From the NCBI GenBank assembly GCA_025594325.1, contig JANHCV010000013.1, positions 744,001-808,000 on the forward strand: 64,000 nt of DNA, read 5' to 3'. Position 1 is the first letter of the stretch; the number at the start of each line of letters is the position of its first letter. Made by a program: the position numbers and the translations under genes. Shown in pieces: positions 2,709-34,389 of this stretch. The stretch comes from Blastocladiella emersonii ATCC 22665 (taxonomy: Eukaryota; Fungi; Blastocladiomycota). A model generated the notes under the pieces. It worked only from the letters and a program-made list of their open reading frames with translations, did no database searches and was not told where the DNA came from.

Positions 2709-3013
2709 GGCGAATGGTTAATCTATGAGCGAGGGAAAGAGGAAGGCACGACACGAACTGGCCGAGACGTGGGAGCCGACCCGCACGTGGGAGCCGACCC
2801 GCACGTGTTGCGCCACTCACGTGATAGCACAACGCGTCTAGCAATGTGTCTCACGCCCCGCCTTTTCGCTTTCCCGCCTTCCAGGTTAACTATCTGGCTG
2901 TAGGCGGTTAGATTTTCTTACCCGCGTTCCAGAGCTTACGCAGTCACAGTTTAGCACGAGGGCCGTCGTCTGAACCAAAAACAATACAATGAGAAGAACA
3001 AAAATGCACGGAA

Positions 3014-3667
3014 TCAACGAGTCTTTTTGTGGTGCGCAGCAAGCGATAGCCCCAGCGTATCCAATCCGCTGCCGGGAACGGGGTACGCGGGAAGGACCAG
3101 AACACGCTTCACAAGCGTGCTCATTATCAAGTCGACGGGACTCTGCGACAAACCCTCATCCCTCGAAGCTGGTTTCTCACCCGAGTCCAAGAAGGTCACT
3201 TGGTCGAGGACAGCATTGGCTTCCGCCGGAAGGCGAAATACAGACATTTGCTTCGCCATGGCAAGACCGATCTCCTTCAGGACACGTAAGCGACCTTTCA
3301 AAGAGAAAGGGGAAGTAGAAGAAGCACAGGGATCAACTGCGAGGGCAAGCTGGCACTTGAGTGCAGGCGTTAGAGTCATTCCGGGACCAGCCGATGGAAG
3401 CAACACAGACTCTTCAAAGCCAAGAAAAAAGATTGGGGCGTCCGAGTCATCGTAGAGCATGGCTGCCTCGTGGCCTGCAGCATAGGCTTCAAAGATGAGA
3501 CGGGTGAACTTGACAGCGCTGGCAGCTGCAGCCGTGGGCAAACCAGACGAGCCAAGCAGAAACAACGCGTTTTCGATGGTGTATGATGTGCCCAATGCGG
3601 GTGGATGCGGCGCGTTGATCAGGTCCGGTGCCGCACAAATGGCCGCACGAATGGCCGCACGAATCAA
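3014..3667 (-). CDS. hypothetical ORF, 217 aa
   Basis: Open frame with plausible globular composition. No recognisable motif, and the start is uncertain. Confidence 0.3.
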   Translation of the reverse strand: MIRAAIRAAICAAPDLINAPHPPALGTSYTIENALFLLGSSGLPTAAAASAVKFTRLIFEAYAAGHEAAMLYDDSDAPIFFLGFEESVLLPSAGPGMTLTPALKCQLALAVDPCASSTSPFSLKGRLRVLKEIGLAMAKQMSVFRLPAEANAVLDQVTFLDSGEKPASRDEGLSQSPVDLIMSTLVKRVLVLPAYPVPGSGLDTLGLSLAAHHKKTR

Positions 3668-3870
3668 GTGCTACATGAGCCGGCTGTCGCGTTGAACAGG
3701 GACACGTCGTCCAACGCGAGGAACGGAAGGTGAGAGCTCAAGATTGCAGGTCGCGCCCGTGATTCGCGTGGAAGTGATGCAAACCTGGTCATCACTAGAA
3801 TCCAGCACGTCCCCCGCCGGAGACACGGGCGATGAAAGAACCATCCTTTGAAGAGAGCCGCAACGAGCCT

Positions 3871-4950
3871 TCAGCATCGCAGCACCGCAGCGGCTTCCGC
3901 TGCCTCACAGTCAAGGAGCTCCATTTTGTTCAGGACAATTGAGCGGAACATCTTGGCACCAAGACGGCTACGGTTGTGCCGCAGAACAGTTCGGCAGACA
4001 GAGAATAGACGTTCAACACTAGTTGTTGTAGCTGGGACAGCAAGCAGGTCAAGCGCAACGCGGGAAAGCGCTGGGAACGACTCCCGCTTTTCGCGCCAGA
4101 AGTCAAGAGGCGACTGCTTGCGGGCTACCTTGTCATTGGCAATGCTGTTCATGAGAATGATGAAGCGCTCGTTTTCGTCGACAAGAGTTTTCGCTGGCTG
4201 GCGGACGTCAAATGCAAGCGTGTCATCATCTGAGTCGGAATCCAAGTCAATCGGATCCGTCGTAGAAGCGCTCCATCAAGCGAAGGTTGGGAGCGATTGA
4301 CAGCCCGGAGCTTCTCGAGTGGCTCAAGGACGTACTCGGCGTAGTAAGGATCAGACGCTCCGTAGTTTCGCCAATCAATAACGCTTGCACGGTTATGGCT
4401 GCGCGGGCTGAGCCAGGTGGCCACTGTGAAAACGTAGGGCAAGCGTTTGTAATGCTTGTTCAGCAAGCCGTAAGAAGCGAATGCGGCGATTGCGACAATG
4501 ACACGAGCTTGCTGGTCGCGAAGCTTCAGCTGGCGCTCTTTTCCTGCAGACAGGGCGTTTTGCACGGCCCACAAGGACTGGCACAGTCTTGATTTCGTCC
4601 TCAAGCGTTTCAGCTGTGCAGGGAGGAGCGCGAACACCAAGCTGATGTCGCGCTGCACACTACGGTTAACGCTGTGCTGAACACAAAAGACAAGAACGAG
4701 ATGGTCGCCGCCATGCTCATCCCAAAGAACCCGGAGCGCGGCCTCGTTGGCCAAAGCACTGTTGGCAGCAATCGAAAAGATCTGGTTGAGGCCGAGGTCC
4801 TAGTCGCCAAGCACGTCGAGGATGGTCTGCGCAATTCCCTCACCAGTCTTCTAGTCCGTTGGCACAAGATCAAGCACGCATTCGTGACGCTCCCACTTCC
4901 TGTCCACAAGAATGATGAATGAAGCACGTATACCTAAGGTGAGAACGCAC
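3871..4950 (-). mobile_element. decayed hAT-superfamily transposase
   Basis: C-terminal dimerisation domain (SPLDFWREKRESFPALSRVALDLLAVPATTTSVERLFS), YK..Y..AT.L.PR motif, CxxH (FCVQH), and W..HECVLDLV..TGEGIA region. Two in-frame TAG stops near 4.8-4.9 kb and a frameshift near 4.2 kb. No TIRs found. Confidence 0.85.
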
Positions 4951-5312: not shown

Positions 5313-6395
5313 ATAAGTAGCTACTATGAGCTAGTCGACGAGGTCAACGCGCTCTGCGAGCATCGCCGACGCCTTGAGAATCAGGTCCGCCGCGTCGCCA
5401 CAGAACCCTTGACGCCTGTCGTCTTACGCCAAACCGCAACCTAGGGTCGCCAAGAGCGCGCTCGCATCGCCGCGCTCGAGGCCGAGACCGCGAGCCTGCG
5501 CACCGAGCTCGAGCAGCTGCGCGCCGAGAACCAGGGCGTCTGGGCTATCCACGGCGAGGACATGGCGCGCGCCGAGGAGCTCAAGGCCGAGAACGGCATG
5601 CTGCGTGCGAAGCTGCTCAACGTCGAGGCCGTCCCGTCGCAGCCGCCCCCACCGCCCCCGCCCCCTGCATTGCCGCCCGTCCCTCAAATGTCGATGGACC
5701 AGGCCGCGGCCGAGGGAGACCTCGACGTGCTGCACGCGTGGCTCAAGACGACGGGCCCGCTCGAGTACACGTCGAACGCGCTCGACGACGCGTCCAGCAA
5801 CGGGTACCTGTACGTGCTGAAGTGGTGGCACGCGCAGTGCGACCCGCGCATGCGGATGCTTTACACGGAGCGCGCGATCGAGGGCGCGTCGGCGCGCGGC
5901 GACAACACCACGCTGTCGTGGTGGAAGTCGATGTGTGGGGACAACATGCCGTGGAGTCACCATGCGCTTAACCTCGCCATCATGAACGGGCACATCAAGA
6001 CGGTCAAGTGGTGGGAGCACTCCAGCGGCAGGACGCTGTGGCCTTCGCTGCAGGCGATCGAGGAGGCGACTCGCTGCAACGACACGGCCATGCTTGCTCT
6101 GCTGAGCAAGATTTACGACCTCAGCGACCTCGACCTCGTGCCCCGGAACCCCATTGTGCTCGCGAGGAAGAACGACGCCCGTGACGCTGCAGAATGGTGG
6201 CTCGAGTACCCAGGCGTGCCTGTTGCCGAGAACGCGCTCCACGCCCTCTCACTCCTCGGCGATACCGCCATGGTGTACGACCTGGTTCAGAAGTTTGGCA
6301 GGGGGCACTTTGACCTGCAGCTCGTCTCGCGCAACCTCCACCAGTATAGCGCGGGCACTGCGGACTGGTGGCGCGACACGTACTGGCTGCTCTGA
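5313..6395 (+). CDS. coiled-coil + Pro-rich + ankyrin-like repeat protein (paralogue 1)
   Basis: Repeats of the type Y...A.D.AS.NG...VL.WW. Intron 5385-5444. The position homologous to the paralogue's ATG is ATA (5313), so the start may be ATG 5562 or 5130. Confidence 0.75.
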
Positions 6396-6639
6396 ACCTC
6401 CTGTGCCTCTCGGTTCCTGTTCTAGTCGCTTTGCACATTCATACATCCCTTGTCACTCACGCCGCGACACAACTCGGAGCTTCTGCGAGACGTCTCGCGA
6501 ATCTCACGCTGCGAAATCATGTGAGCGCCACACGCCCCAATTTCGACCGCCGCGTCAGCAGCTCGCCGCCACAGACTTCGCCGACCGATATGGTCGCCGC
6601 TCCCAACGCTGCTCCCGCTGACTCTACGCATGCTAAACT

Positions 6640-6660
6640 CATGAAATAACTTGCCGCAAT
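6640..6660 (+). promoter_or_regulatory. start-proximal motif (ATGAAA-N1-2)-ACT-N4-GCAAY, representative copy
   Basis: Exact ACT-N4-GCAA lies within about 30 nt of 18 predicted starts in the window (listed in findings). Confidence 0.6.
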
Positions 6661-9600
6661 GGATTCAGCGTCGCCATTCCTGCCGATGCAGACAAGCGCA
6701 ACAGTCCTTCATGCGGATTCGTCGATGTACTTTGACCCGTACAGCAACTCCCATGCCGACGACATCTTCCTTTACCACGATGCCAGCAGTGCTGATCGCG
6801 ACCTGAGCGCCCTCCTTTGCGGCTTCAACGACTTGCGCTCACTCGCCCACACACTCAGCCAGGCCGCCCTCAAGGGCTCGCGCGCCGCCATGACGTTTAC
6901 GCTCAACGACCTGCGCGTCGAGCCGATCGCTCGCTCCCTTTTCATCCTGCACGCGCTCATGTTCTCGACGCTGGACCGCCCGACCCTCGATCGCTTTCTT
7001 TGCCAGCTTTGGGTCTCGAACTCAATTGAAACTGATACGTTCGAATTTTGGTACATCCATACGCACGCTTGCATCGATTACGATTGTCTCTCGGCTTCCT
7101 CGCGCGTGCGCGTGGCGGACGAATGTACCCTGCGGGCGGTCCGCGACTGCTGGGAAAACTGGCTCGGCCATTCCGTCGTACTAGCGCTTGCCAACTATGC
7201 ATCCGTGCGTAAAGGTTTGGTTGTCCAACTTGATGCTCCCGCGGTCCTGGTAGCGGGGAACGGAGCGGTTTGCCCCAGCGACATCGATGACAAGAAGAGC
7301 CGTGCAGCTTCCGCAGTCTTCCTCGATTGTGCCGAAAAGTTGAAGCCGTTGGTTGTCGCCCGTGTGAGCTGCGAAATCCAGCTTCTCGTTGAAAGCGGCG
7401 AGTACCATTTCCGCACGAACAAAAGCTTGAGTCGCGCCGACGGTCTTGATAGCGTCACGGAAAACGAATCGAGGACGGTCATGAACCCATTCTTCACTGG
7501 CCTTGGCACGTCCCCACATGCAACGCTTGGTGTTCCGCTCACGGGCTTTCTCGTTGACCCTAGCGGCGAGCGGATCCGCAATTCAATCTTTGTCGAATTG
7601 CGCACCTGGCTTCGCGTTTTGTCCGACACGTTCTCGCCTGATTCACCTTCTACTCACAGGCTTACCTTTGTCCTCGGCGACGCCGTCCTGGTGATGGAAC
7701 AGTTCCTTGCTGACACCGCGCTCCGCTTCGACGTGATCGACACCTCCACGCTCGTCGTCCAGTGCGGCGAGCTGAACGTCGTACTGCACGGCTCGCACTT
7801 GCTCAAGCACAACGACTCGGCGGCGGGCGATTCCTCGCTTCTCCTGCTCCACACAAATGCTCCAGTGGATATGGAGGTGACTGAATCAGCCGAGTTCTTT
7901 GAATATTTCTTTGGGATTCCCCCACACCTGCTTCCCGTTCTCTTTGGTGTCGCGATTTGTGGAGAGGAGGGCGGCGAGTCTGGCCACTGGCTTGCGCAGG
8001 TTCAGCCGTTTGCACCCGTCGCGCGCGCTCAGCCTTATTCCGAACCACGCCCTTATGTTGGAATCATCTTGCGCAAGCTCGTGGTCCCTGACGTACCCAT
8101 GTCCTTGGACGCGTCTGGGGATTGGATGTCTGTCAAAGAGACCTTGTTCGACGTTGACAATGAGGAAGAGGACGACAGGTTCATGACCGGTACGCGCCTC
8201 TGTCCCGCGTCCCACTTCAAACGGATTTAAATAACATTTAAAACTCCACGATCATTTAGGCGGCTCGTTCTTCACCGCTGCGTTCGGGATCAAGGTCGTC
8301 GCGTACGCCATGGCCAGTCGCCGCCTTGTTTGGTCAAAGGCGACTCCGTTTACCTCGCTCCCTTTCAATTCCAACGAGCGCATCGGCTTTTGGTCAGGCT
8401 ACTTTTTCGATTCGCCTGATGTGCTGCTTGAACGGAAGCCGATCATGCTCACACACGGGCTCCTCCCGAGCGATGGGACTCTAGTTCCTGCGACCATCTC
8501 TCGCGCGAGCGCCACGTTTACATTGACCGACTCTTGGCGGACGAACTTTTCGACTTGCTCCATTCGCGTCGCTGCCGAGCCAGAATCTGGCGGCGAGGTT
8601 TTGTACACCCACTCTCTGAACGCGACTTGCGATCACGTTCGAGACGTGGTTCGTGTCAGTTGGGACGTGACCAACTTTGCTGGGCTCCGGTTCTCCATTC
8701 ACGCGGTTCCGGTCCTGAACTCCCGCCGAACCAGCCAAACGACCGAGCCGATCTGCATCAGCAACACGCTTTCTTACGATGAAAACGCCGAGCCCTTTTC
8801 GATGACGGCTGTCGCGGTCACGACCGTTGCCGTGTCAGACGCCCGGCGCGGGATCCAGGGGATCATCGACTACAGCGCGTCCGCTGGTCGACCCTTACCT
8901 CGCGGACTGTTGTCCCTGCCCGTTATCGAGCTCGTTGACGCGGATCATGACGACTCGAACTTCGACTATGACTACAATGCGGAACTTGTGCTCAGCCTCC
9001 CGCGCGGCCGCAACAAGGTTACCGTCAAGCCCGTGCCTGACCGCGACCTCGCCCAGTACCGGGGTGCAGTTGCGCTGCTTGTCGACGGGCAGGTGCTTAC
9101 GTTCCAGCTGCCGTACTCTGCTCGCGCCACGGACGTCGCAATCGACCGCCAATCGCGTATTGTGAGCGTTCTCTTGAAAAGGTCCGCAGCGACCGTTATT
9201 CCAACCCTTGGACTTGGCCCCGTGGTCCCGCGCCTTGTGGCCGAGATGGCCGTCCCCGATTCCGAGTTCTTGCGCACCGCCGCTTTCGAGACGCTCAAGG
9301 GAATGTTCACACTCCGCGAGTGGCCACGCGGCCACTCCGCGAGTGGCCACGCGGCGCGCAGTCTGCCGTCGTGCCTCGTGCACCGCCCGCGGGTGGCGCT
9401 GGATTCGGCGCGTGGAATGCCCTTGCGCTCAAGCTGATGATCAAGCAGGTTTTTGATCACTTTATTGGCACGAATCGTTCGTGCGTTGTCAGGCTTGCAG
9501 CGCCCAACCCCCGCGGGACGATTTCTATACTTTTTCTCCACCGCTCAGTCATCCTCCCGCCGCAGGGCAAGTCGAAAAACATTATGCCCGCGCTCGAGGT

Positions 9601-26021: not shown

Positions 26022-27649
26022 CTACTCGCGCGCGCCGACCTCGCCGCGGAGATACTCCCCCACGGCCTCGCCGCACCCCTCGGTCTCATCCACGAGCCCC
26101 GTGGCGCTCGCCTCGCACACGAGCGGGGTGACGTTCGGGAACCGGGCGAGCGCGGCGTCAAGTTTCTGGGTCGTGGCCGGGGTGTCGATGTACAGGACGA
26201 ACACGGCGTCGTAGCCGCCGGCTACACACGTCCACGACGTTAGTATCCCAGCGGTTGAACAGCGAAGCAGCAGCGCGACGTACCGCCGGGCACTCCGGCA
26301 CCCAGGACGCCCGGCACCCCCGCGCATGCGTCGAGCAACTCGCGCTGCTCCACGGGCTCGATCGGGACCCCCGCCTGCTCCCCCATCTCGCGCATCCCCG
26401 TGCGGCCGCGGGCCAGGACCCCCGCGAGCTCGTCGAGCACGTACCCGATCTCGTCGCCCTTCTTCATCCCGCTCGCCCACACGTCGAGCGCCGCATCGTA
26501 CCCGGGGCCCGCACTGGACCGCTCCAGGGCGCGGAACAGGTCGACGGCGCGCATATTCCCGTCATCCAGCGCGCGCCACCGCGCGTCGGCGTCTTTGGGG
26601 CAAGCGGCGCGCCACGCGAGGACGCGCGCGACGAGCGACGGCGTGTGCGAGCCCGCGGCGACGTCGGCGAGGAGCAGGCGGATGCGCGGGGGCAGGGCGA
26701 ACGGCGCGACGTGCGTGCGGAGCGAGGTGGCGAGGGAGGGGTCGAGGGCGGCGAGGAGGGCGGCGGTTGTGGGTGCGGTCTACACGCGCGCAAAGTTAGG
26801 TTGCGATCGGGCGATGCGAAGTGAGCGCGACGCGTACCTTATCCCCCATAATCCCGGCAATGGTCTTGGCGTCAAACCGGCGGTACACGTGCGTCCCGAC
26901 CGCCGCCGACGAGACATCGAACCCGGACCCGACTTTCCCCTGGGCGAGGCAGTGTGCGAACTGGGCCGCGTTATGGATCCACCCGACCTCCCCCTCCAAC
27001 TTGCCCACCACGAACCGCCAGACGGCCGCGACGAGCGACGTGACGAGCGCCGCGGACGACCCGAGCCCGGTCTTGTTGACGTTAGCCAGGGTTGGGCCGG
27101 GCGGCAAGAAGGCGGGGAGCGAGGCGAGCGCGGCGCGGGTGGTCGGGAGGCCGCGCGCGGCGAGGTTGGCGGACTGCGAGTAGAAGTCGTTGTCGGCGAG
27201 GACGTAGATGTGCAGGGCACGGGCGGGGTCGGGGGAAGGGGTGCAGCGGGTGTGCGAGAGCTGCAGCGCGACGCGCAGCGCGTGGTCGATGAACTTGTTG
27301 GGCGCCGGGCTACATTCCCCCAAAAATCAGTCGTGGGTCTCTCACGGCCAGTTCCGAGAGAGACGTACGGCGCAGACAGAACCGCAAACTCGCGCCGCCC
27401 CGTCGCCTCGCTCACCCCCGCGTCGAACCGGTACTTGCGCGGCGGGTCGGCGGGGAACTGCGGCGAGTGGACCGTCACGTCCAGGACACCCTCCTCTCCG
27501 CCCTCGACCGAACGCACGACCGTGTGGAAGCGCGCGGACGTGGCGACGACGACGCCCGAGTGGGCCGGGTCGAGGACCAGGTACCCGCCGGCGATCAGGG
27601 CCTTGCCGGGCGAGGATACGGCGACGGCTTTGGGTGCATGCGATGCCAT
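26022..27649 (-). CDS. ERG8: phosphomevalonate kinase, fungal type (~482 aa)
   Basis: SSPGKALIAGGYLVLD, KTGLGSSAA, QGKVGSGFDV and GVPGAGGYDA GHMP motifs. Four exons (27649-27369, 27309-26838, 26779-26284, 26221-26022) splice in frame. Confidence 0.95.
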
Positions 27650-27820
27650 GGTTGCGGTCTAGTTGTGCGAGTTGGGGAGAGAGAGAGGACCGCGGGCTCT
27701 TTGACGCGAAGCTTTTCTCCTGACGCCGGTGACGCCACTGGTCGCCCGACTCGGCACGCCGCCGTCTTCTCTTTCACATCCCTCTCCGTCAGCCCTCGCT
27801 CACCACCACATGCAACTCCA

Positions 27821-28811
27821 ATGAACACACCCGCGCAACCACCCGCAACCCCGTCGTTCCCGTTCGCCCCCCCGCCGGACCTGATCCGCGCCGCGCAAAA
27901 GGACGACGCGTACGTGGCGTCGGTGCGGCACGCGCTCGACTCGGTGCTGGCGTCCCTGTTGGGCCCGCGGCTGCACGCGCGGTACTCGCGCCTCCTCGAC
28001 CCCGCGGCCGCCACCGTCTACTACGCGCTGACGACGGGCCGCGCGGCCGCGACGTTGGGCGAGGAGTACTGCGATCTCGCGCCGGTGGACGCGGGTGGGC
28101 GGCGGGCGCCGGGGCGGCTGGTACGCTGAGACCCGCTAGTTGTTAGCGAGGTTTGTGCTGATACCCCCCGAAACTGTAGTCGCGCGCGGGATACATCCTC
28201 GCGCAATCGCTCGCCCTCCCGCTCGTCCGGTGGTACCTCACGTCCACGTCCACTTCAACCTCGTCCGACTGGAGATCCCGCGCCGCCGCGGCGCTCAAGC
28301 TCGCGGCCCCGCTGCACCTCGCGGCGTTCTACTTTTTCGGCACCTACTACCGCGTCGCGCGCCGGGTCGCGGGGATCCGCACGGTACGTCGTTGCGGGTT
28401 CGTTGCGGGTTCGCTGCACGGGTCCGGTTGTTGATTGACGCCTGCGTGTAGCTGAGCCTCGCGAAACCCGCACCCGACGCGACCGCGCTGTCGTACGCGC
28501 CGCTCGGGTGGCTGATCCTGGTGCAGGTCCTGGTCACGGCGGCGGGCGCGGCGTGGACCGCGCGGCGCGCCGCCGCCAAGTCCGCGAAACCCGCTCCCGC
28601 CACCCTCCCCTCGGCCACCGCTACGGCCGACCTCGCGGAATCCGCGGCCGACTGCGTCCTATGCATGTCCGCGTGCGAATCCCCGGCGCTGTGCCCGTGC
28701 GGCCACGTCTTCTGCTGGCCGTGCGTCGGCGCGTGGCTGCACGAGAAGCCCGAGTGCCCGCTATGCCGCGACCCGTGTGCGTTGCGAGACCTCGTGTGTG
28801 TGGATTATTAA
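27821..28811 (+). CDS. PEX10: peroxin 10, RING E3 ligase (~287 aa)
   Basis: LIRAAQKD, TLGEEYCD, HLAAFYFFGTYY..ARRVAGIR and a C3HC4 RING. Exons 27821-28120, 28180-28383, 28452-28811. Confidence 0.93.
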
Positions 28812-28847
28812 AGATTCGATATATGTACAATCTCCTCACCTCCTCTC

Positions 28848-30113
28848 TCAATGACACGTCGGCTGCTTCACCACCACCGTCTCCTCGCCCGAATCGTACC
28901 CCGACACGGGCGCATGCCGTGCGCGGCGCGGCGGCGGGTCGCGGTTGAACACCATGTTCCCGGCGAACCCGCCCAAAAGAAACGCGGCGCACCAGCCCCA
29001 GTTGTACGCCATGACGACGAGCATCAGGACGAACGAGTACGCGAGCTCGAACGTCGCGAGCGCCGCGCGCGCGGCGACCAGGAGTTCGCGCCGCACGCGG
29101 AGCGACGTTGGGCTCGCGCTTGGCGTCACGGCCGTGGAGGTCGGGAGCACGGTGCTCGAGGACGACGACGCGGTGGAGACCGAGGAGGGTGAGGGCGACA
29201 GCTGCGCGTGCACGTCGGCGAGCGCCGCGTCGATCCGGGGCGTGACGACGCGGCGCGCCGCCGCGGTGACCGCGTAGTAGGCGAACGAGAGGACGAAGAC
29301 GCCGACGGTCGCGGCCCAGTACTGCGCGCGCGTGCGCGTCACCCACCCGCGGAACAGGAGCAGGTCGTTGATGTCCTGGTGGAAGTACATGCGCATCGGC
29401 GGGATCTCGGCGAACGGGTCGCTGCCCTGCTCGACGGGGTCCGCCGTGGTGCCGGTACCGGGCGCCGAGACGCCGGGGGTTGACGAGGAAGAATCGTCGG
29501 ACGCCAGCGCGGCGGCCGAGCACACGGCCGGGAACGCCTGGACCGCGCCCTTGACCTCGCTGCACATGCCCTTCCACGGCGCGTTGCACATGGTCATGTC
29601 GGGCATCGCCTTGCACATGATGGCGTACGTCGCCAGCGAGTCGCACGCGTCGAGCTTCTCGACCGGCACCGCCACGGACGCCGCGGGGCTCGCGCACCGG
29701 TCGCACCCCTCCATGTTGTGCACCTTGCACATGCGGTACACCTGGTTCTGGAACACCGAGCTGTTGGTCCATTTCGGCCACGCCTTGTCGGCCGCGCACG
29801 CCGCGGGGTTGGCGGCGCAGTAGCTGAGGTAGGGGCGGCACAAAGTGTCGGCGGCCGTCGGCGGGTTGTCGTACGAGCACAGCGCGTCGAGGAGGGCGAG
29901 AGTCGAGCAGCCGGGTTTCGCCGCGTCCGACTGGCACCCCGCGCGCAGGAGGAGCGTGCACGCGCCGTACTTGTTGGACGAGGCCGGCGTGCAGAAGGCC
30001 GTGAGCGCGGCGCGCGAGGGGGGCGACGGGGACTGCGCGGCCGCGTGGGTCGCGAGGAGGAGCAGGGCGAAGAGGAAGAGGGCCGCCGTGGCGGGTGGCC
30101 GTGGCGAGGGCAT
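28848..30113 (-). CDS. CTR: Ctr-family high-affinity copper transporter with signal peptide and Cys/Met-rich ectodomain (421 aa)
   Basis: MRMYFH before TM1, MxxxM (MLVVM) in TM2, GxxxG (GGFAG) in TM3. Ectodomain contains CKAMPDMTMC and CKVHNMEGC. Intronless. Confidence 0.9.
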   Translation of the reverse strand: MPSPRPPATAALFLFALLLLATHAAAQSPSPPSRAALTAFCTPASSNKYGACTLLLRAGCQSDAAKPGCSTLALLDALCSYDNPPTAADTLCRPYLSYCAANPAACAADKAWPKWTNSSVFQNQVYRMCKVHNMEGCDRCASPAASVAVPVEKLDACDSLATYAIMCKAMPDMTMCNAPWKGMCSEVKGAVQAFPAVCSAAALASDDSSSSTPGVSAPGTGTTADPVEQGSDPFAEIPPMRMYFHQDINDLLLFRGWVTRTRAQYWAATVGVFVLSFAYYAVTAAARRVVTPRIDAALADVHAQLSPSPSSVSTASSSSSTVLPTSTAVTPSASPTSLRVRRELLVAARAALATFELAYSFVLMLVVMAYNWGWCAAFLLGGFAGNMVFNRDPPPRRARHAPVSGYDSGEETVVVKQPTCH

Positions 30114-30349
30114 CGTTGCGAGCTTGGTGGGTGTTGGATCGATGAGGGTGCAGCGAGAGAGGGGAGGGGAGAAGCGACCGGTATTTGTAGGCAGGGCCGG
30201 GGTCGGTCAGGAAGCGGCGCGAGCAGCGCCACTACACTCGTCTCTCCAGCCGCGTCCCCGCGCCTTTCAGGATGCAGCCACGCTCGGAATCGGTCAGGGA
30301 CAAGCACAGAGAAGTAGGATATTCGAATATATTGCTTCCACGCTCACGC

Positions 30350-30937
30350 TCACAGGAGCTGCATCACCGCGCCGCCCGCCGCCGCCGCCACGAGTCCCAC
30401 CACGGCCGACCCGGCGAACCCGCCGGCCGCGCCGCTCTTCCCCGGCGCCGCGCCGCCCGACCCGCCCGCCGCCTGGAAGCTGACGTCGCCGCACTGGTAC
30501 AGCACCCCGTCTCCGGCATCGTACACGGTCATGATGGTCCCCTCCTTCCCCACGAGGTCACCCGCCGACTTGAGCCCGAGCCCCTTGACCGCGCTCTCGC
30601 TCAGCTTATCAAACGGCGCATCGACCGTCTGCGCGCCGACCTTGCCGAGCAGCGTGTTGGTCACAGGCGTGAAGTCCGACACGGCGGCGGGCGCGGGCTT
30701 GAGCGAGATGTAGATGGTGAAGTTGGCGTTGGTATGGTACGCCGTAATCCCGATGGGTTTCCCGACGGGCCACCCGGAACGGGGCGTCTGCGGGGTGTTG
30801 AAGTTGCCGCAGGGAGGCGTCGGCATCTGCTCTTCCTGCATCCCGCGCGTCGGCGGCGACGTCAGGATGTAGTGCGCGGACGCCGCGTGGGAAAGCGCGA
30901 GCAGGGTCAGCGCGAGGGTCAGGAACGTGTTGCGCAT
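30350..30937 (-). CDS. Bim1/X325-like (LPMO-like) copper-binding GPI-anchored protein (195 aa)
   Basis: 21-aa signal peptide, then His1 (HYILTSPPTRG). PPCG, second His in ITAYH (H68), YDAGDGVLYQCGDV (D143), Gly/Ser linker and hydrophobic GPI-like tail. Confidence 0.85.
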   Translation of the reverse strand: MRNTFLTLALTLLALSHAASAHYILTSPPTRGMQEEQMPTPPCGNFNTPQTPRSGWPVGKPIGITAYHTNANFTIYISLKPAPAAVSDFTPVTNTLLGKVGAQTVDAPFDKLSESAVKGLGLKSAGDLVGKEGTIMTVYDAGDGVLYQCGDVSFQAAGGSGGAAPGKSGAAGGFAGSAVVGLVAAAAGGAVMQLL

Positions 30938-31439
30938 GGTGTCTTGGAGTTGTCGATGGAGCAGGAACCGGCGTCGTCGATGGAGAGCAGGAATCGGGAA
31001 GTGAGAGCGAAAGCGAAAAAGCAGAGTCGCCCAAACAAACCAGCGCGTCATCTGACCACTGAGCGACCGACCGGCGGCATCGCCCGAGTGCGCGTTTCAG
31101 CCAAGCCGCGCAGCGCCGCGCAACGTCATTGGTTGGCCGCACTCCGCAGCAGCAGCGGCGAGCAAGCACCCCCAACAACGGCGGCCGGCCGGGAGAACAA
31201 GGCGACGGCGACGGCGGGAGAACAATGACGGCGACGGGGTGCATGCAAGTGTGCGCGCAGCGGGCGAGGAGGGTGTGTGGGAAGCGCAGCACGGCCGACA
31301 ACAACGAGCGGATCCCGAAGCGCGCGGGTGTGGGAGGCAGCGAGCGGGTCGGGAACACGAGGCGGGTGGGTCGGGTCCGAGCGGGGTCAGGATCGGGTCG
31401 GGGTGGGCCCGCGTGGCGCCCGCACGGCCGAGCGAGGTT

Positions 31440-32058: not shown

Positions 32059-34389
32059 ATGCCACTCCCCGCCATCCACGGCCGCCCGACCTCGGCCGTC
32101 GCGGCGCGTCCCGCCACCTCGTCGTCGGGATCCGATGCCGCGTCCCCACGCCAGCCGCTCCCGTCGCCGCCGCACCAGCAGCACGTCAAGCACTTCCGCC
32201 CGGCGATTGCGACCAACCCCGAGCACCTCGCCGCGGTCCGCCACTCGCTGCCGTTCCTGCCCGGGTACAACTTCAGCTTCAAGCACCGGCCCAACTTCCG
32301 CAAGTCGCACGCCTTCGATTACTCGAACGCCGTGCCCGTGTTCCGCGAGGAGCGGCCTGGGATCGGTACGCGCTGTCGTTGCGGGATTGAGGAGCGGAAC
32401 TGACTTGTTGTCTCGTGTAGGCGGCTACCCGCTGCTCGGCCAGGAGGCCAAGCGCGTGCACACGTCGGCCGAGCTGCTCAAGCACCTGCTGCCGTCGGAC
32501 GACGCCGACGCGAACGCCGAGACGGTGCCCGCGTGGATCGCCTTTGACCGCAAGGTGCTCCGCTTCTACGCCTACTTCCAGGAGGCGGTCCAGGAGCGCC
32601 GCGAGGAGCAGTTCCGCATCCGCAAGTACGTCATCCACGCACTCCCCTTCACCCCCGACCATCACTCACCCTCCACCCCGCCCCGCCGCCCGTAGAGTCA
32701 ACATCCTGTACTACCTCGAGGACGACACGGTGCACGTCATCGAGCCGCGCGGCGTCAACTCGGGCATCCCGCAGGGCACGCTGATCCGCCGCCACCGCAT
32801 CCCGGTCCCGTCCCCCAACGGGCAGGCGGACCCGCACCACCGCCAGTACTACCTCTTCTCGGACCTCAGCGTCAGCCGCGAGGTCACCTTCTACGCGCGC
32901 ACCTTCAAGATTGTCGGGTGCGACGCCTTCACGCGGGTACGTCGTGTCCGCTTCTGCGCTCCGCCGTCGCTGACCCGCGCGCGTCATCGTGTAGGACTTC
33001 CTCCACTCGCTCGGCGCCGCGGTCCCGCCAAACACCGACTACCCGAACGACCCGTACGAGTCGACGCGCCGCGAGATGCTGTCGCGGATGCGCCCGACGC
33101 GCCCGGTCCCGCCGAAAACGTCCCTGAAAAAGTTCCTCGAGAACGACCGCAAGGTGCTCCGCTTCTACTGTGTGTGGGACGACACGACGGCCGCGTTCGG
33201 CGACGCGCGCAAGCTCGTGCTGCACTACTTCCTCGCCGACGATACGATGGAGATCCACGAGCACATTGCGCCCAACTCGGGGCGCGACGGGAACACGGCG
33301 TTCCTCAAGCGCGGCAAGGTGCCGAAGCGCGTCAAGATCGGGTCGTCGCAGGCGCTCGTGCCGCGGTCCGACGACTTTTATACGGATCGCGATTTGGTCC
33401 TGGGCGCGGTACTGAACGTGTTTGGTCGCCCGTTCCTACTGTGTGACTGTGACGAGTTTACCAAGGAGTACTACCGCGAGCGTACGTGTTCTTTGGGGGA
33501 CGGTGATCGTGGCCGTGGACGAGACTGACGCGCGTTACGTGTAGGCTACGGGCTCACTGACTTCCACCCGATCGCGTACGACGCCATCTACCTCGAGCAC
33601 GCGCAGATGCCCGAGACTCCCCTCGCCACCACCTCCGTCTCGCTGCCGGGCAACAGCGGCCCGCCGACGGCCCCGATGCCAGGCTACACGCCGCCCGAGT
33701 ACAACGGGTGGGGCAGCGAGGAAGACTCCCTCGGCTCGTGCGTCTCGCTCACCCCGAAACCGCCCAAGAAGGACATGAAGAAGGAGCTGCAGTACGGCAA
33801 CACGGTCCTGCGCTTCGCCGCCCTCCTCAACACGAACCGGCAAGTCGACCGCGAGCGCCGGTTCGTCGTGTCCTACTACATGGCCGACGACACGGTCCAG
33901 GTCTTCGAGCCGCACCTGCGCAACTCGGGCATCGTCGGCGGCAAGTGGCTCGAGCGGTCCCGCGTCAAGGTGCCCACGGGGCCGCCGGGCGTCGCCCCGC
34001 TCCGTCCGCTCGCGACGCATGACCTGTTCGTCGGCGCCGAGCTGTTCCTCGCGGGCTTCCCGTTCGTCCTGATTGGCGCGGATGAGCATGCGCTCACGTT
34101 CATGGACGCGCACCCGCACCTGTTCCGCAACCACGCGCCGCGCGGCAAGGGGAAGGTCGCGAGCGTCAAGCCGACGGACGAGGAGCTCGGGCGCGTCCGG
34201 TTCGCGGTGCCCGCGCCCGAGGTCGAGGGGATCGGCGGGCGGCGCGCGCCGATGACGGCCGAGCGCGAGGGCGAGGCGGGCGGGCTCAGCGGCGAGGGCG
34301 AGGAGGGCGAGGAGTACCACGACCCCGACCACCGGTTCCCGCTCGGCGGCGAGTACATTCGGTTCGACAGCAAGGTGGCGCTCGTGTAG
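32059..34389 (+). CDS. EFHC1: EFHC1/EFHC2 (Rib72)-like axonemal microtubule inner protein, three DM10 domains (~694 aa)
   Basis: LPFLPGY N-terminus. DM10 starts FDRKVLRFYAYF, NDRKVLRFYCVW and YGNTVLRFAALL. Five exons splice in frame (introns 32366-32420, 32626-32695, 32937-32994, 33482-33544). Confidence 0.9.

What the first reader, a model, noticed from the sequence alone, without database searches (positions are those of the whole stretch)
28848..30937. Adjacent Bim1/X325-like Cu-binding protein and Ctr transporter: candidate two-gene copper-capture module
Seen: two co-oriented, intronless genes only 236 bp apart. One encodes a secreted GPI-type protein with His1 directly after the signal peptide, a second His (H68) and the GDG Asp (D143). 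The other is a Ctr with all transport motifs. Known: X325/Bim1 proteins bind Cu through His-His-Asp, and Cryptococcus Bim1 acts with Ctr1 in Cu uptake. Inference: physical linkage in an early-diverging zoosporic fungus suggests an ancient, co-regulated surface Cu-scavenging unit. I am not aware of such linkage being described but cannot search for it.
Basis: partly seen in the sequence, partly recalled or inferred. Interest (0 to 1): 0.82.

Follow-up and report, generated by a model that had tools for sequence, protein, structure and literature searches.

The report
Linked copper-capture and copper-channel genes
A water mould carries a gene for a surface copper-grabbing protein directly in front of a gene for a copper channel, and three related genera keep the same arrangement, which suggests but does not prove that the two proteins take up copper together.

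Summary
On the minus strand, 30350-30937 encodes a 195-aa secreted, GPI-type BIM1/X325-like protein. Pfam PF20238 scores E 7.5e-19. H22/H68/D143 align with the copper ligands of LaX325, which is also the top structural match. After a 236-bp spacer, 28848-30113 encodes a 421-aa Ctr (PF04145, E 4.6e-24) with a Mets motif, MxxxM, GxxxG and a C-terminal Cys-His. It also has a 16-cysteine Cys/Met ectodomain that is probably the published CTRA domain.

The same BIM1-then-Ctr, same-strand pair occurs in Blastocladiella britannica, Catenaria anguillulae and Allomyces arbusculus, although the flanking genes differ. The pair is absent beside the orthologous BIM1-like genes of Sorochytrium and Paraphysoderma. 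It is also absent in two chytrids, in Auricularia, and in nine metagenomic Ctr relatives.

Separate clusters with a different gene order exist in Rhizoctonia solani (Ctr, BIM1, ferric reductase) and Umbelopsis (Ctr, ferric reductase, BIM1). The linkage is therefore lineage-specific and recurrent, not fungus-wide and ancestral.

Co-regulation is untested. I found no shared promoter motif and no RNA data. I found no paper that describes the adjacency; one preprint notes Ctr proteins with C-terminal BIM1 domains. I rate this a moderately interesting new variant of the known Bim1-Ctr1 copper-uptake system.

The parts
30350..30937 (-). BIM1/X325-like gene of 195 aa. Signal peptide is aa 1-21 and the mature N-terminus is His22. 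Copper ligands are H22, H68 and D143, with a Cys43-Cys149 pair. A Gly/Ser/Ala linker is followed by a C-terminal hydrophobic tail (aa 181-194), which is a GPI-type signal.
   Evidence: Pfam PF20238, E 7.5e-19. PDB 6IBH LaX325, E 3.5e-5, with ligand alignment. AF2 model pLDDT 87; Foldseek top hit is LaX325 at E 3.8e-9 and TM 0.71 by the target's length.
30114..30349 (-). 236-bp spacer between the BIM1-like stop and the Ctr start. It must hold the 3' end of the first gene and the promoter and 5'UTR of the second. An AT-rich island lies at 30302-30341.
   Evidence: Sequence. No Mac1 CuRE and no GTAC core. No motif shared with the BIM1 upstream region beyond shuffles.
28848..30113 (-). Ctr copper transporter gene of 421 aa. 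It has a signal peptide, a Cys/Met-rich ectodomain (aa ~34-205, 16 invariant Cys, C167xxMxxMxxC176-x7-C184) and a Ctr domain (aa 242-389) with M240/M242, M364xxxM368 and G381xxxG385. The C-terminus is Cys-His.
   Evidence: Pfam PF04145, E 4.6e-24. No Pfam family for the ectodomain. Alignments A1 and A3. Weak top structural hit to the Dictyostelium P80 ectodomain.
30952..30993 (-). Two copies of TTCCTGCTC(T)CCATCGAC, 26 nt apart, 15-56 nt upstream of the BIM1-like ATG. This is an untested candidate promoter or 5'UTR element.
   Evidence: Read from the sequence. It is not a Mac1 CuRE by regex, and its similarity to the Ctr upstream region is within the null.
32135..32695 (+). DM10-domain gene fragment, divergent from the BIM1-like gene. 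This flank is shared with Blastocladiella britannica only.
   Evidence: Pfam DM10, E 3.2e-5. A DM10 gene lies upstream of BIM1 in L001.
27467..28811 (+). Pex2/Pex12-family RING peroxin gene, convergent with the Ctr gene. This flank is shared with Catenaria only.
   Evidence: Pfam Pex2_Pex12, E 4.9e-11, and zf-RING_2, E 1.4e-9. A Pex2_Pex12 RING gene lies downstream of Ctr in L002.

Best explanation
This is a conserved head-to-tail gene pair of the core Blastocladiales that encodes two parts of a surface copper-uptake route.

Shown:
- Gene 1 is a secreted X325/Bim1-family protein with a GPI-type tail. Its His22/His68/Asp143 site matches the copper site of LaX325.
- Gene 2 is a Ctr-family Cu(I) channel with all pore motifs, plus a Cys/Met-rich ectodomain of the CTRA-CTR kind.
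- The pair is kept in four genera while the flanking genes change.

Inferred:
- The anchored protein captures Cu(II) at the cell surface.
- Copper is reduced. No reductase gene lies in this window.
- Copper then passes to the Cys/Met ectodomain and the M240/M242 motif, goes through the MxxxM pore, and is handed on by the C-terminal Cys-His.
- The genes stay adjacent because selection favours their joint expression under copper scarcity. This would parallel the documented ctr-fre pairs of Fusarium and the Ctr/BIM1/reductase clusters seen here in Rhizoctonia and Umbelopsis.
For: Gene identities.

Conserved BIM1-then-Ctr adjacency on one strand:
- L001, B. britannica.
- L002, Catenaria.
- L003, A. 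arbusculus.
- The partners are 52-55% (BIM1-like) and 47-61% (Ctr) identical to the window's proteins by tblastn segment.
- Each flank of the window is shared with only one of the three relatives.

Independent clustering elsewhere:
- R. solani L009 has Ctr pieces at about 6260-6950. Pfam Ctr hits fragments at E 1e-4 and 5.5e-3, and the matches to the Umbelopsis Ctr are collinear. A BIM1-like gene with its own signal peptide follows directly, then a ferric reductase.
- Umbelopsis L010 has a Ctr (E 3.5e-22), then a ferric reductase divergent from a BIM1-like gene, all within 6 kb.
- Proteins P0067 and P0087 fuse a BIM1 domain to a ferric reductase.

Literature:
- Cbi1/Bim1 acts in copper uptake through Ctr1 in Cryptococcus (abstract of PMC9258870).
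- Ctr proteins with C-terminal BIM1 domains are noted in fungi (preprint 10.1101/2023.10.19.563170).
- ctr3/fre9 and fre12/ctr1b are divergent Mac1-bound pairs in Fusarium (PMC11563359).

Rough inference on chance: with 6 or fewer Ctr genes in about 9,000 or more genes, a given gene has a Ctr neighbour with a probability of about 1e-3.
Against: - There is no expression data: no RNA run was listed.
- The two upstream regions share no motif beyond shuffles, and there is no Mac1-type CuRE.
- Orthologous BIM1-like genes of Sorochytrium and Paraphysoderma are unlinked.
- Paralogous Ctr genes of A. macrogynus have no BIM1-like neighbour.
- Nine metagenomic Ctr relatives have none in their flanks.
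- Part of the wider neighbourhood is also conserved with single relatives, so some of the linkage may simply be slow rearrangement.
- Rhizoctonia was picked because of its over-long gene model, so it is not a random sample. Its Ctr reads in three frames, which means either assembly errors or a pseudogene.
- In Cryptococcus the two genes are unlinked (from memory), so linkage is not needed for the partnership.
Confidence: 0.6

Rival explanations
1. The adjacency is inherited synteny without functional meaning. The two genes came to lie together once in an ancestor of Allomyces, Catenaria and Blastocladiella and have not yet been separated. Each has its own promoter and is regulated independently.
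For: - Flanking genes are also partly conserved: DM10 with B. britannica and the Pex RING gene with Catenaria.
- No shared cis-motif was found.
- Linkage is absent in Sorochytrium, Paraphysoderma, the chytrids and Auricularia.
Against: - The pair survives in all four genomes, whereas each flank survives in only one.
- Ctr/BIM1/reductase clusters have arisen separately in a basidiomycete and a mucoromycete with a different order and orientation.
- Domain fusions link BIM1 to ferric reductase and, by report, to Ctr.
- The chance of adjacency of two partner families is about 1e-3 per lineage.
Confidence: 0.25
2. The BIM1-like protein does not mainly feed the transporter. Instead it acts on the cell surface or wall, for example in remodelling, integrity or copper buffering and protection. 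On this view its position next to Ctr reflects a shared response to copper rather than a hand-off of copper.
For: - Cbi1/Bim1 also affects cell-wall integrity and copper stress resistance in Cryptococcus (PMC9258870 abstract; PMC12113139).
- X325 genes are developmentally regulated in Agaricomycetes (PMC10282164).
- The Ctr already has its own large copper-binding ectodomain, so a separate capture protein may be redundant.
Against: - The same literature places Cbi1/Bim1 in copper uptake through Ctr1.
- Repeated clustering and fusion with the two uptake components, Ctr and reductase, fits uptake better than wall work.
Confidence: 0.12

Closest known systems
Cryptococcus neoformans Bim1/Cbi1 with Ctr1 (Garcia-Santamarina et al. 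2020; Probst et al. 2022, PMC9258870)
   Same: A GPI-type, secreted LPMO-like copper protein of Pfam PF20238 is partnered with a Ctr-family importer. The N-terminal His and the second His are conserved.
   Different: In the window the two genes are adjacent and co-oriented. In Cryptococcus they are at separate loci (from memory). The partner Ctr here carries a large Cys/Met ectodomain. No functional data exist for this organism.
LaX325 of Laetisaria arvalis (PDB 6IBH/6IBI/6IBJ; Labourel et al. 2020)
   Same: It is the best sequence match (E 3.5e-5) and the best structural match (E 3.8e-9, TM 0.71 by the target's length). The His1/His49/Asp ligands and the disulfide cysteines align.
   Different: Identity is only about 26%. 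The species is a basidiomycete. No transporter link has been reported for LaX325 itself.
CTRA-CTR transporters: Chlamydomonas CTR1/CTR2, Dictyostelium P80 and chytrid Ctr proteins (Strenkert et al., bioRxiv 10.1101/2023.10.19.563170)
   Same: A Ctr has an N-terminal extracellular Cys-rich domain carrying Met motifs. The window protein has an exact CxxMxxMxxC motif followed by a further Cys. The only non-noise Swiss-Prot structural hit is the P80 ectodomain.
   Different: Homology of the ectodomain to the algal and amoebal CTRA domain was not shown by sequence here. The fold model is of low confidence. The preprint does not, in the text I could read, describe a neighbouring BIM1 gene.
Fungal copper-uptake gene clusters: Fusarium oxysporum ctr3/fre9 and fre12/ctr1b, direct Mac1 targets (PMC11563359)
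   Same: Genes for components of reductive copper uptake are physically paired. In Fusarium they are co-induced from shared promoters.
   Different: Those pairs are transporter plus reductase and are divergently transcribed. This pair is capture protein plus transporter, head to tail, with no Mac1-type element detected.

Membership tests
X325 / BIM1-like copper proteins (Pfam PF20238) | Profile match above the curated cutoff | tested here: met
   69 bits against a cutoff of 27, E 7.5e-19.
X325 / BIM1-like copper proteins (Pfam PF20238) | Histidine as the first residue of the mature protein, directly after the signal peptide | tested here: met
   The sequence reads ASA|H22. H22 is invariant in 50 homologues and aligns with His1 of LaX325. 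The cleavage site itself is inferred, not run through a predictor.
X325 / BIM1-like copper proteins (Pfam PF20238) | Second His and an Asp that complete the copper site | tested here: met
   H68 aligns with H49 and D143 with D122 of chain 6IBH_A. H68 is at least 90% conserved. The GDG Asp is the majority residue but is below 90% conservation.
X325 / BIM1-like copper proteins (Pfam PF20238) | LPMO-like beta-sandwich fold | tested here: met
   The AF2 model has pLDDT 87. Foldseek ranks the LaX325 chains first (E 3.8e-9), followed by AA10 and AA9 LPMOs.
X325 / BIM1-like copper proteins (Pfam PF20238) | GPI anchoring to the cell surface | tested here: inconclusive
   A Gly/Ser/Ala-rich disordered linker is followed by a C-terminal hydrophobic helix at aa 181-194. 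This fits a GPI signal, but no GPI predictor was available.
X325 / BIM1-like copper proteins (Pfam PF20238) | Copper binding and absence of polysaccharide-cleaving activity | not testable with these tools
   This needs recombinant protein.
Ctr copper transporters (Pfam PF04145) | Profile match, three-helix core with MxxxM in TM2 and GxxxG in TM3, and an extracellular Met motif | tested here: met
   86 bits against a cutoff of 25.3. M240-R-M242, M364xxxM368 and G381xxxG385 are conserved in the linked orthologues.
Ctr copper transporters (Pfam PF04145) | Copper(I) transport as a trimer | not testable with these tools
   This needs yeast complementation or uptake assays.
CTRA-CTR subfamily (Strenkert et al. 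preprint) | Cys-rich extracellular domain N-terminal to the Ctr core, with conserved putative copper ligands | tested here: met
   The seven Blastocladiomycota orthologues share 16 invariant Cys, 6 invariant Met and 1 invariant His. The motif C167xxMxxMxxC176-x7-C184 is present.
CTRA-CTR subfamily (Strenkert et al. preprint) | Homology of that domain to the CTRA domains of Chlamydomonas CTR1/2/3 or Dictyostelium P80 | tested here: inconclusive
   The top Swiss-Prot AlphaFold hit is P80 aa 226-365, but it is weak (E 0.26, probability 0.77, TM 0.34) and comes from a model with pLDDT 59. The Atlas search was uninformative. No algal or amoebal sequence was available to align.
Copper-uptake gene cluster (co-regulated neighbouring uptake genes) | Adjacency conserved across species | tested here: met
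   Four Blastocladiales genomes show it. It is not found in six other lineages sampled.
Copper-uptake gene cluster (co-regulated neighbouring uptake genes) | Joint induction by copper limitation, or a shared regulator site | tested here: inconclusive
   No shared motif was found beyond chance, and there is no CuRE. No RNA runs were listed.

The most novel reading that the evidence does not exclude
BIM1-like capture proteins, Ctr channels and ferric/cupric reductases may have been brought together repeatedly and independently in different fungal phyla. This would have happened as neighbouring genes (Blastocladiales, Rhizoctonia, Umbelopsis) and as fused proteins (BIM1-reductase, and by report Ctr-BIM1). 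On this reading the three form one physically interacting surface machine. In Blastocladiales the histidine-brace protein would hand copper directly to the Cys/Met ectodomain of its neighbouring transporter.
Probability: 0.35. Interest if true: 0.6.

Novelty: new variant of a known kind. Interest (0 to 1): 0.45.

Why it matters
In the papers I could read, the Bim1-Ctr1 partnership rests on genetics in one basidiomycete yeast; Pseudogymnoascus adds only joint induction of its Ctr and Bim1-like genes when copper is withheld. A gene pair conserved in a distant zoosporic lineage, together with independent clusters and fusions that involve Ctr and reductase, is comparative evidence that X325 proteins generally belong to reductive copper uptake. 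It also pairs an X325 protein with a CTRA-type transporter. This raises a testable question: how do two extracellular copper-binding modules divide the work? The practical value is a ready-made two-gene cassette for complementation tests.

Tried and rejected
**Shared copper-responsive promoter element**
- There is no Mac1 CuRE (TTTGC[TG]C[AG]) in any of the eight upstream regions, and no GTAC core in the window.
- The best shared k-mer, ACCGACC, occurs in 6 of 8 regions, which only equals the maximum seen in 200 shuffles.
- Within each species, the best match between the BIM1 and Ctr upstream regions lies inside the null; the one exception is a poly-A run in B. britannica.

**Shared 3' element**
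- ATTCGA(A)TATAT follows both stop codons and holds the only two ATATAT sites in the 64 kb.
- This similarity ranks only 24th of 780 pairs of AT-rich islands, so I dropped it.

**Reaching chytrid CTRA-CTR proteins**
- Both protein searches returned only Blastocladiomycota.
- The Atlas search of the ectodomain scored at most 0.48.

**A4 macrogynus Ctr-BIM1 fusion**
- The 534-aa model P0167 has only a junk N-terminal extension and no BIM1 domain.

**RNA evidence**
- The runs tool was busy three times. It then listed no RNA run, only DNA runs of the source sample. I therefore did not use read laying.

**Other checks**
- The Garcia-Santamarina 2020 paper is not held.
- The window contains no ferric reductase and no second BIM1 or Ctr copy.
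Full report
**1. What is in the window**

The region has about 66-71% G+C, with no compositional break. Two ORFs lie on the minus strand.

- The upstream ORF is 30350-30937 and encodes 195 aa.
- The downstream ORF is 28848-30113 and encodes 421 aa.
- The spacer between them, 30114-30349, is 236 bp.
- Pfam assigns the first to BIM1-like_dom (PF20238, E 7.5e-19, 69 bits against a cutoff of 27).
- Pfam assigns the second to Ctr (PF04145, E 4.6e-24, aa 242-389).

Both genes are single ORFs that cover the whole length of their orthologues. In the orthologues, the tblastn matches are split at about aa 59 (BIM1-like, Catenaria) and aa 134 (Ctr; Catenaria and Allomyces).

**2. The BIM1-like protein**

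Starting at 30937 gives a signal peptide that ends in ASA, followed by His22. The Catenaria orthologue has the same layout.

- Against solved structures, the only real sequence hit is LaX325 (6IBH, E 3.5e-5).
- In that alignment, H22, H68 and D143 sit on H1, H49 and D122 of the chain, and C43 and C149 sit on C22 and C128.
- In an alignment of 50 homologues, H22 and C43 are invariant. H68 and C149 are at least 90% conserved.
- An AlphaFold model built on that alignment has mean pLDDT 87.
- Foldseek ranks the LaX325 chains first (E 3.8e-9, TM 0.71 by the target's length), followed by AA10 and AA9 LPMOs.
- The tail is a low-confidence Gly/Ser/Ala linker followed by a hydrophobic helix at aa 181-194. 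This is the usual form of a GPI signal. No GPI predictor was available.

**3. The transporter**

The Ctr core has M240-R-M242 ahead of TM1, M364xxxM368 and G381xxxG385. The protein ends in Cys-His.

Between the signal peptide and the core lie about 170 residues with no Pfam family.

- Seven Blastocladiomycota orthologues share 16 invariant Cys, six invariant Met and one invariant His in this stretch.
- The stretch includes C167-x2-M-x2-M-x2-C176-x7-C184.
- From memory, this is the Cys-Met motif type described for Chlamydomonas CTR proteins.
- A preprint names such domains CTRA. It places CTRA-CTR proteins in early-diverging fungi, Amoebozoa (P80) and green algae (10.1101/2023.10.19.563170).
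- My fold model of the domain is poor (pLDDT 59).
- Even so, the only hit that stands out among reviewed proteins is the ectodomain of Dictyostelium P80. It is weak: E 0.26, probability 0.77.

I read the protein as a probable CTRA-CTR, but membership is not settled.

**4. Which organism**

The closest Ctr homologues are from Blastocladiella britannica, Catenaria anguillulae and Allomyces species, at 39-52% identity. The genome is therefore a Blastocladiomycota genome. I did not verify that name.

**5. Is the linkage conserved?**

In three other genomes a BIM1-like gene lies directly upstream of the orthologous Ctr on the same strand.

- B. britannica, L001: 6836-7474, then 8001-9338.
- Catenaria, L002: 1609-2288, then 2983-4404.
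- A. arbusculus, L003: 6897-7505, then 8001-9345.
- The spacers there are about 500-700 bp.

The flanks are less stable than the pair.

- The DM10 gene upstream in the window is shared only with B. britannica.
- The Pex2/12-family RING gene downstream is shared only with Catenaria.
- A. arbusculus differs from the window on both sides.

A BIM1-like fragment (P0017) and a Ctr fragment (P0011) both come from a JGI contig of 5,230 bp. They probably represent one more linked pair, but I could not fetch the contig.

**6. Where the linkage is absent**

- Two paralogous Ctr genes of A. macrogynus have no BIM1-like neighbour. These paralogues have lost the second Gly of GxxxG and the C-terminal Cys motif.
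- The best BIM1-like genes of Sorochytrium, Paraphysoderma, Gaertneriomyces, Phlyctochytrium and Auricularia have no Ctr beside them.
- Nine metagenomic loci that encode more distant relatives of this Ctr have no BIM1-like sequence in their flanks.

A tree of 36 BIM1-like proteins puts all the Blastocladiomycota sequences in one supported clade (98/90). Sorochytrium and Paraphysoderma lie at its base, and the linked genes lie inside it. The linkage therefore dates at least to the common ancestor of Allomyces, Catenaria and Blastocladiella. Either it arose after the basal lineages split off, or they lost it.

**7. Independent clusters elsewhere**

*Rhizoctonia solani.* A 442-aa 'BIM1' gene model (P0136) is in fact two genes merged.

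- The first is a Ctr, in pieces at about L009:6260-6950.
- Two Ctr fragments hit Pfam Ctr at E 1e-4 and 5.5e-3. They are collinear with the Umbelopsis Ctr, and MLAVM and GEVLFGR are visible.
- The second is a BIM1-like gene with its own signal peptide, starting at 7307.
- A ferric reductase gene lies about 850 bp further downstream.
- The Ctr pieces read in three frames. This points to assembly errors or a pseudogene.

*Umbelopsis vinacea.* A Ctr (E 3.5e-22), an aminotransferase-like gene, and a ferric reductase divergent from a BIM1-like gene all lie within 6 kb.

*Fusion proteins.* Two metagenomic proteins join an N-terminal BIM1 domain to a ferric reductase.

The Rhizoctonia and Umbelopsis BIM1-like genes fall in other clades of the tree. 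Their gene order differs, and their Ctr genes lack the ectodomain. These clusters look like independent assemblies.

**8. Chance**

With at most about six Ctr genes among 9,000 or more genes, a given gene has a Ctr as immediate neighbour with a probability of about 1e-3. Two immediate adjacencies among about eight independent lineages would then have a probability of roughly 5e-5. This is a rough inference only. Rhizoctonia was chosen because of its over-long gene model, so the sample is not random.

**9. Regulation**

I found no computational support for co-regulation.

- There are no Mac1-type elements.
- There is no GTAC core in the window.
- No k-mer shared by the upstream regions exceeds the shuffles.
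- The similar 3' flanks are not unusual among the window's AT-rich islands.
- A direct repeat, TTCCTGCTC(T)CCATCGAC x2, lies just upstream of the BIM1-like ATG (30952-30993). It is an untested candidate element.
- No RNA run was listed.

**10. Literature**

- Abstracts state that Cbi1/Bim1 works in copper uptake through Ctr1 in Cryptococcus (PMC9258870).
- In Pseudogymnoascus, both Ctr genes and two Bim1-like genes are induced when copper is withheld. By their locus tags they lie at separate loci (PMC12113139).
- Fusarium has Mac1-bound divergent ctr-fre pairs (PMC11563359).
- The Chlamydomonas preprint mentions Ctr proteins with C-terminal BIM1 domains in fungi. After the Rhizoctonia case, some of these may be merged gene models of neighbouring genes.
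- Seven full-text searches, including one for Blastocladiella and copper, turned up no paper describing BIM1-Ctr adjacency. The 2020 Bim1 paper was not available.

**11. Verdict**

The genes and their linkage are real, and the linkage is conserved in the core Blastocladiales. The functional reading is plausible by analogy and by recurrent clustering, but it is untested here. On that reading, a surface histidine-brace protein feeds a neighbouring Ctr of the Cys/Met-ectodomain type. 'Ancient and fungus-wide' is not supported; 'lineage-specific and convergent' fits better. I rate it a new variant of a known system, of moderate interest.

Noticed in passing
P0067 (637 aa) and P0087 (603 aa), metagenome proteins: An N-terminal BIM1-like domain is fused to a ferric-reductase transmembrane domain plus NAD-binding domains. 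This is a domain fusion that links X325 proteins to the surface reduction of metal ions.
   Followed up: partly
L009:6001-10540 (Rhizoctonia solani CP059661.1): The annotated 442-aa BIM1 model merges a Ctr gene with a BIM1-like gene, and a ferric reductase follows. The Ctr reads in three frames, which points to indel errors or a pseudogene.
   Followed up: partly
L010:506-6684 (Umbelopsis vinacea): A Ctr, an aminotransferase-like gene, a ferric reductase and a divergent BIM1-like gene lie within 6 kb. The annotated model merges the Ctr with a COG2 gene.
   Followed up: partly
L012:4600-6974 (Phlyctochytrium planicorne): Two BIM1-like genes are arranged head to head, with no Ctr nearby.
   Followed up: no
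P0007, P0008, P0009 (Allomyces paralogues; L004, L005): The Ctr paralogues without a BIM1-like neighbour have GxxxA in place of GxxxG in TM3 and lack the C-terminal Cys motif. The linked copies keep both features.
   Followed up: partly
window 28848-30937 compared with L002, L003 and L004: Both window genes are intronless. In the orthologues the tblastn matches are split at about aa 59 (BIM1-like, Catenaria) and aa 134 (Ctr; Catenaria and Allomyces), which suggests introns there.
   Followed up: no
window 28812-28826 and 30318-30332: The only two ATATAT hexamers in the 64 kb lie within about 35 nt after the stop codons of the two genes, inside ATTCGA(A)TATAT. Similar ATATATC strings follow the B. 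britannica Ctr and the A. arbusculus BIM1-like gene. The similarity is not an outlier among AT-rich islands.
   Followed up: yes
P0165 (Batrachochytrium salamandrivorans, 913 aa): A gene model joins a BIM1-like domain to a reverse transcriptase domain. It is probably a retroelement next to or inside the gene, or a merged model.
   Followed up: no
same genome, other pieces (earlier notes s1-292552 and s1-076376): Earlier first-stage notes report two further items in this genome. One is a GPI-anchored Cys/Met ectodomain detached from any transporter. The other is an atypical LPMO-like copper protein. Both may be further parts of the copper-uptake set, and I checked neither here.
   Followed up: no
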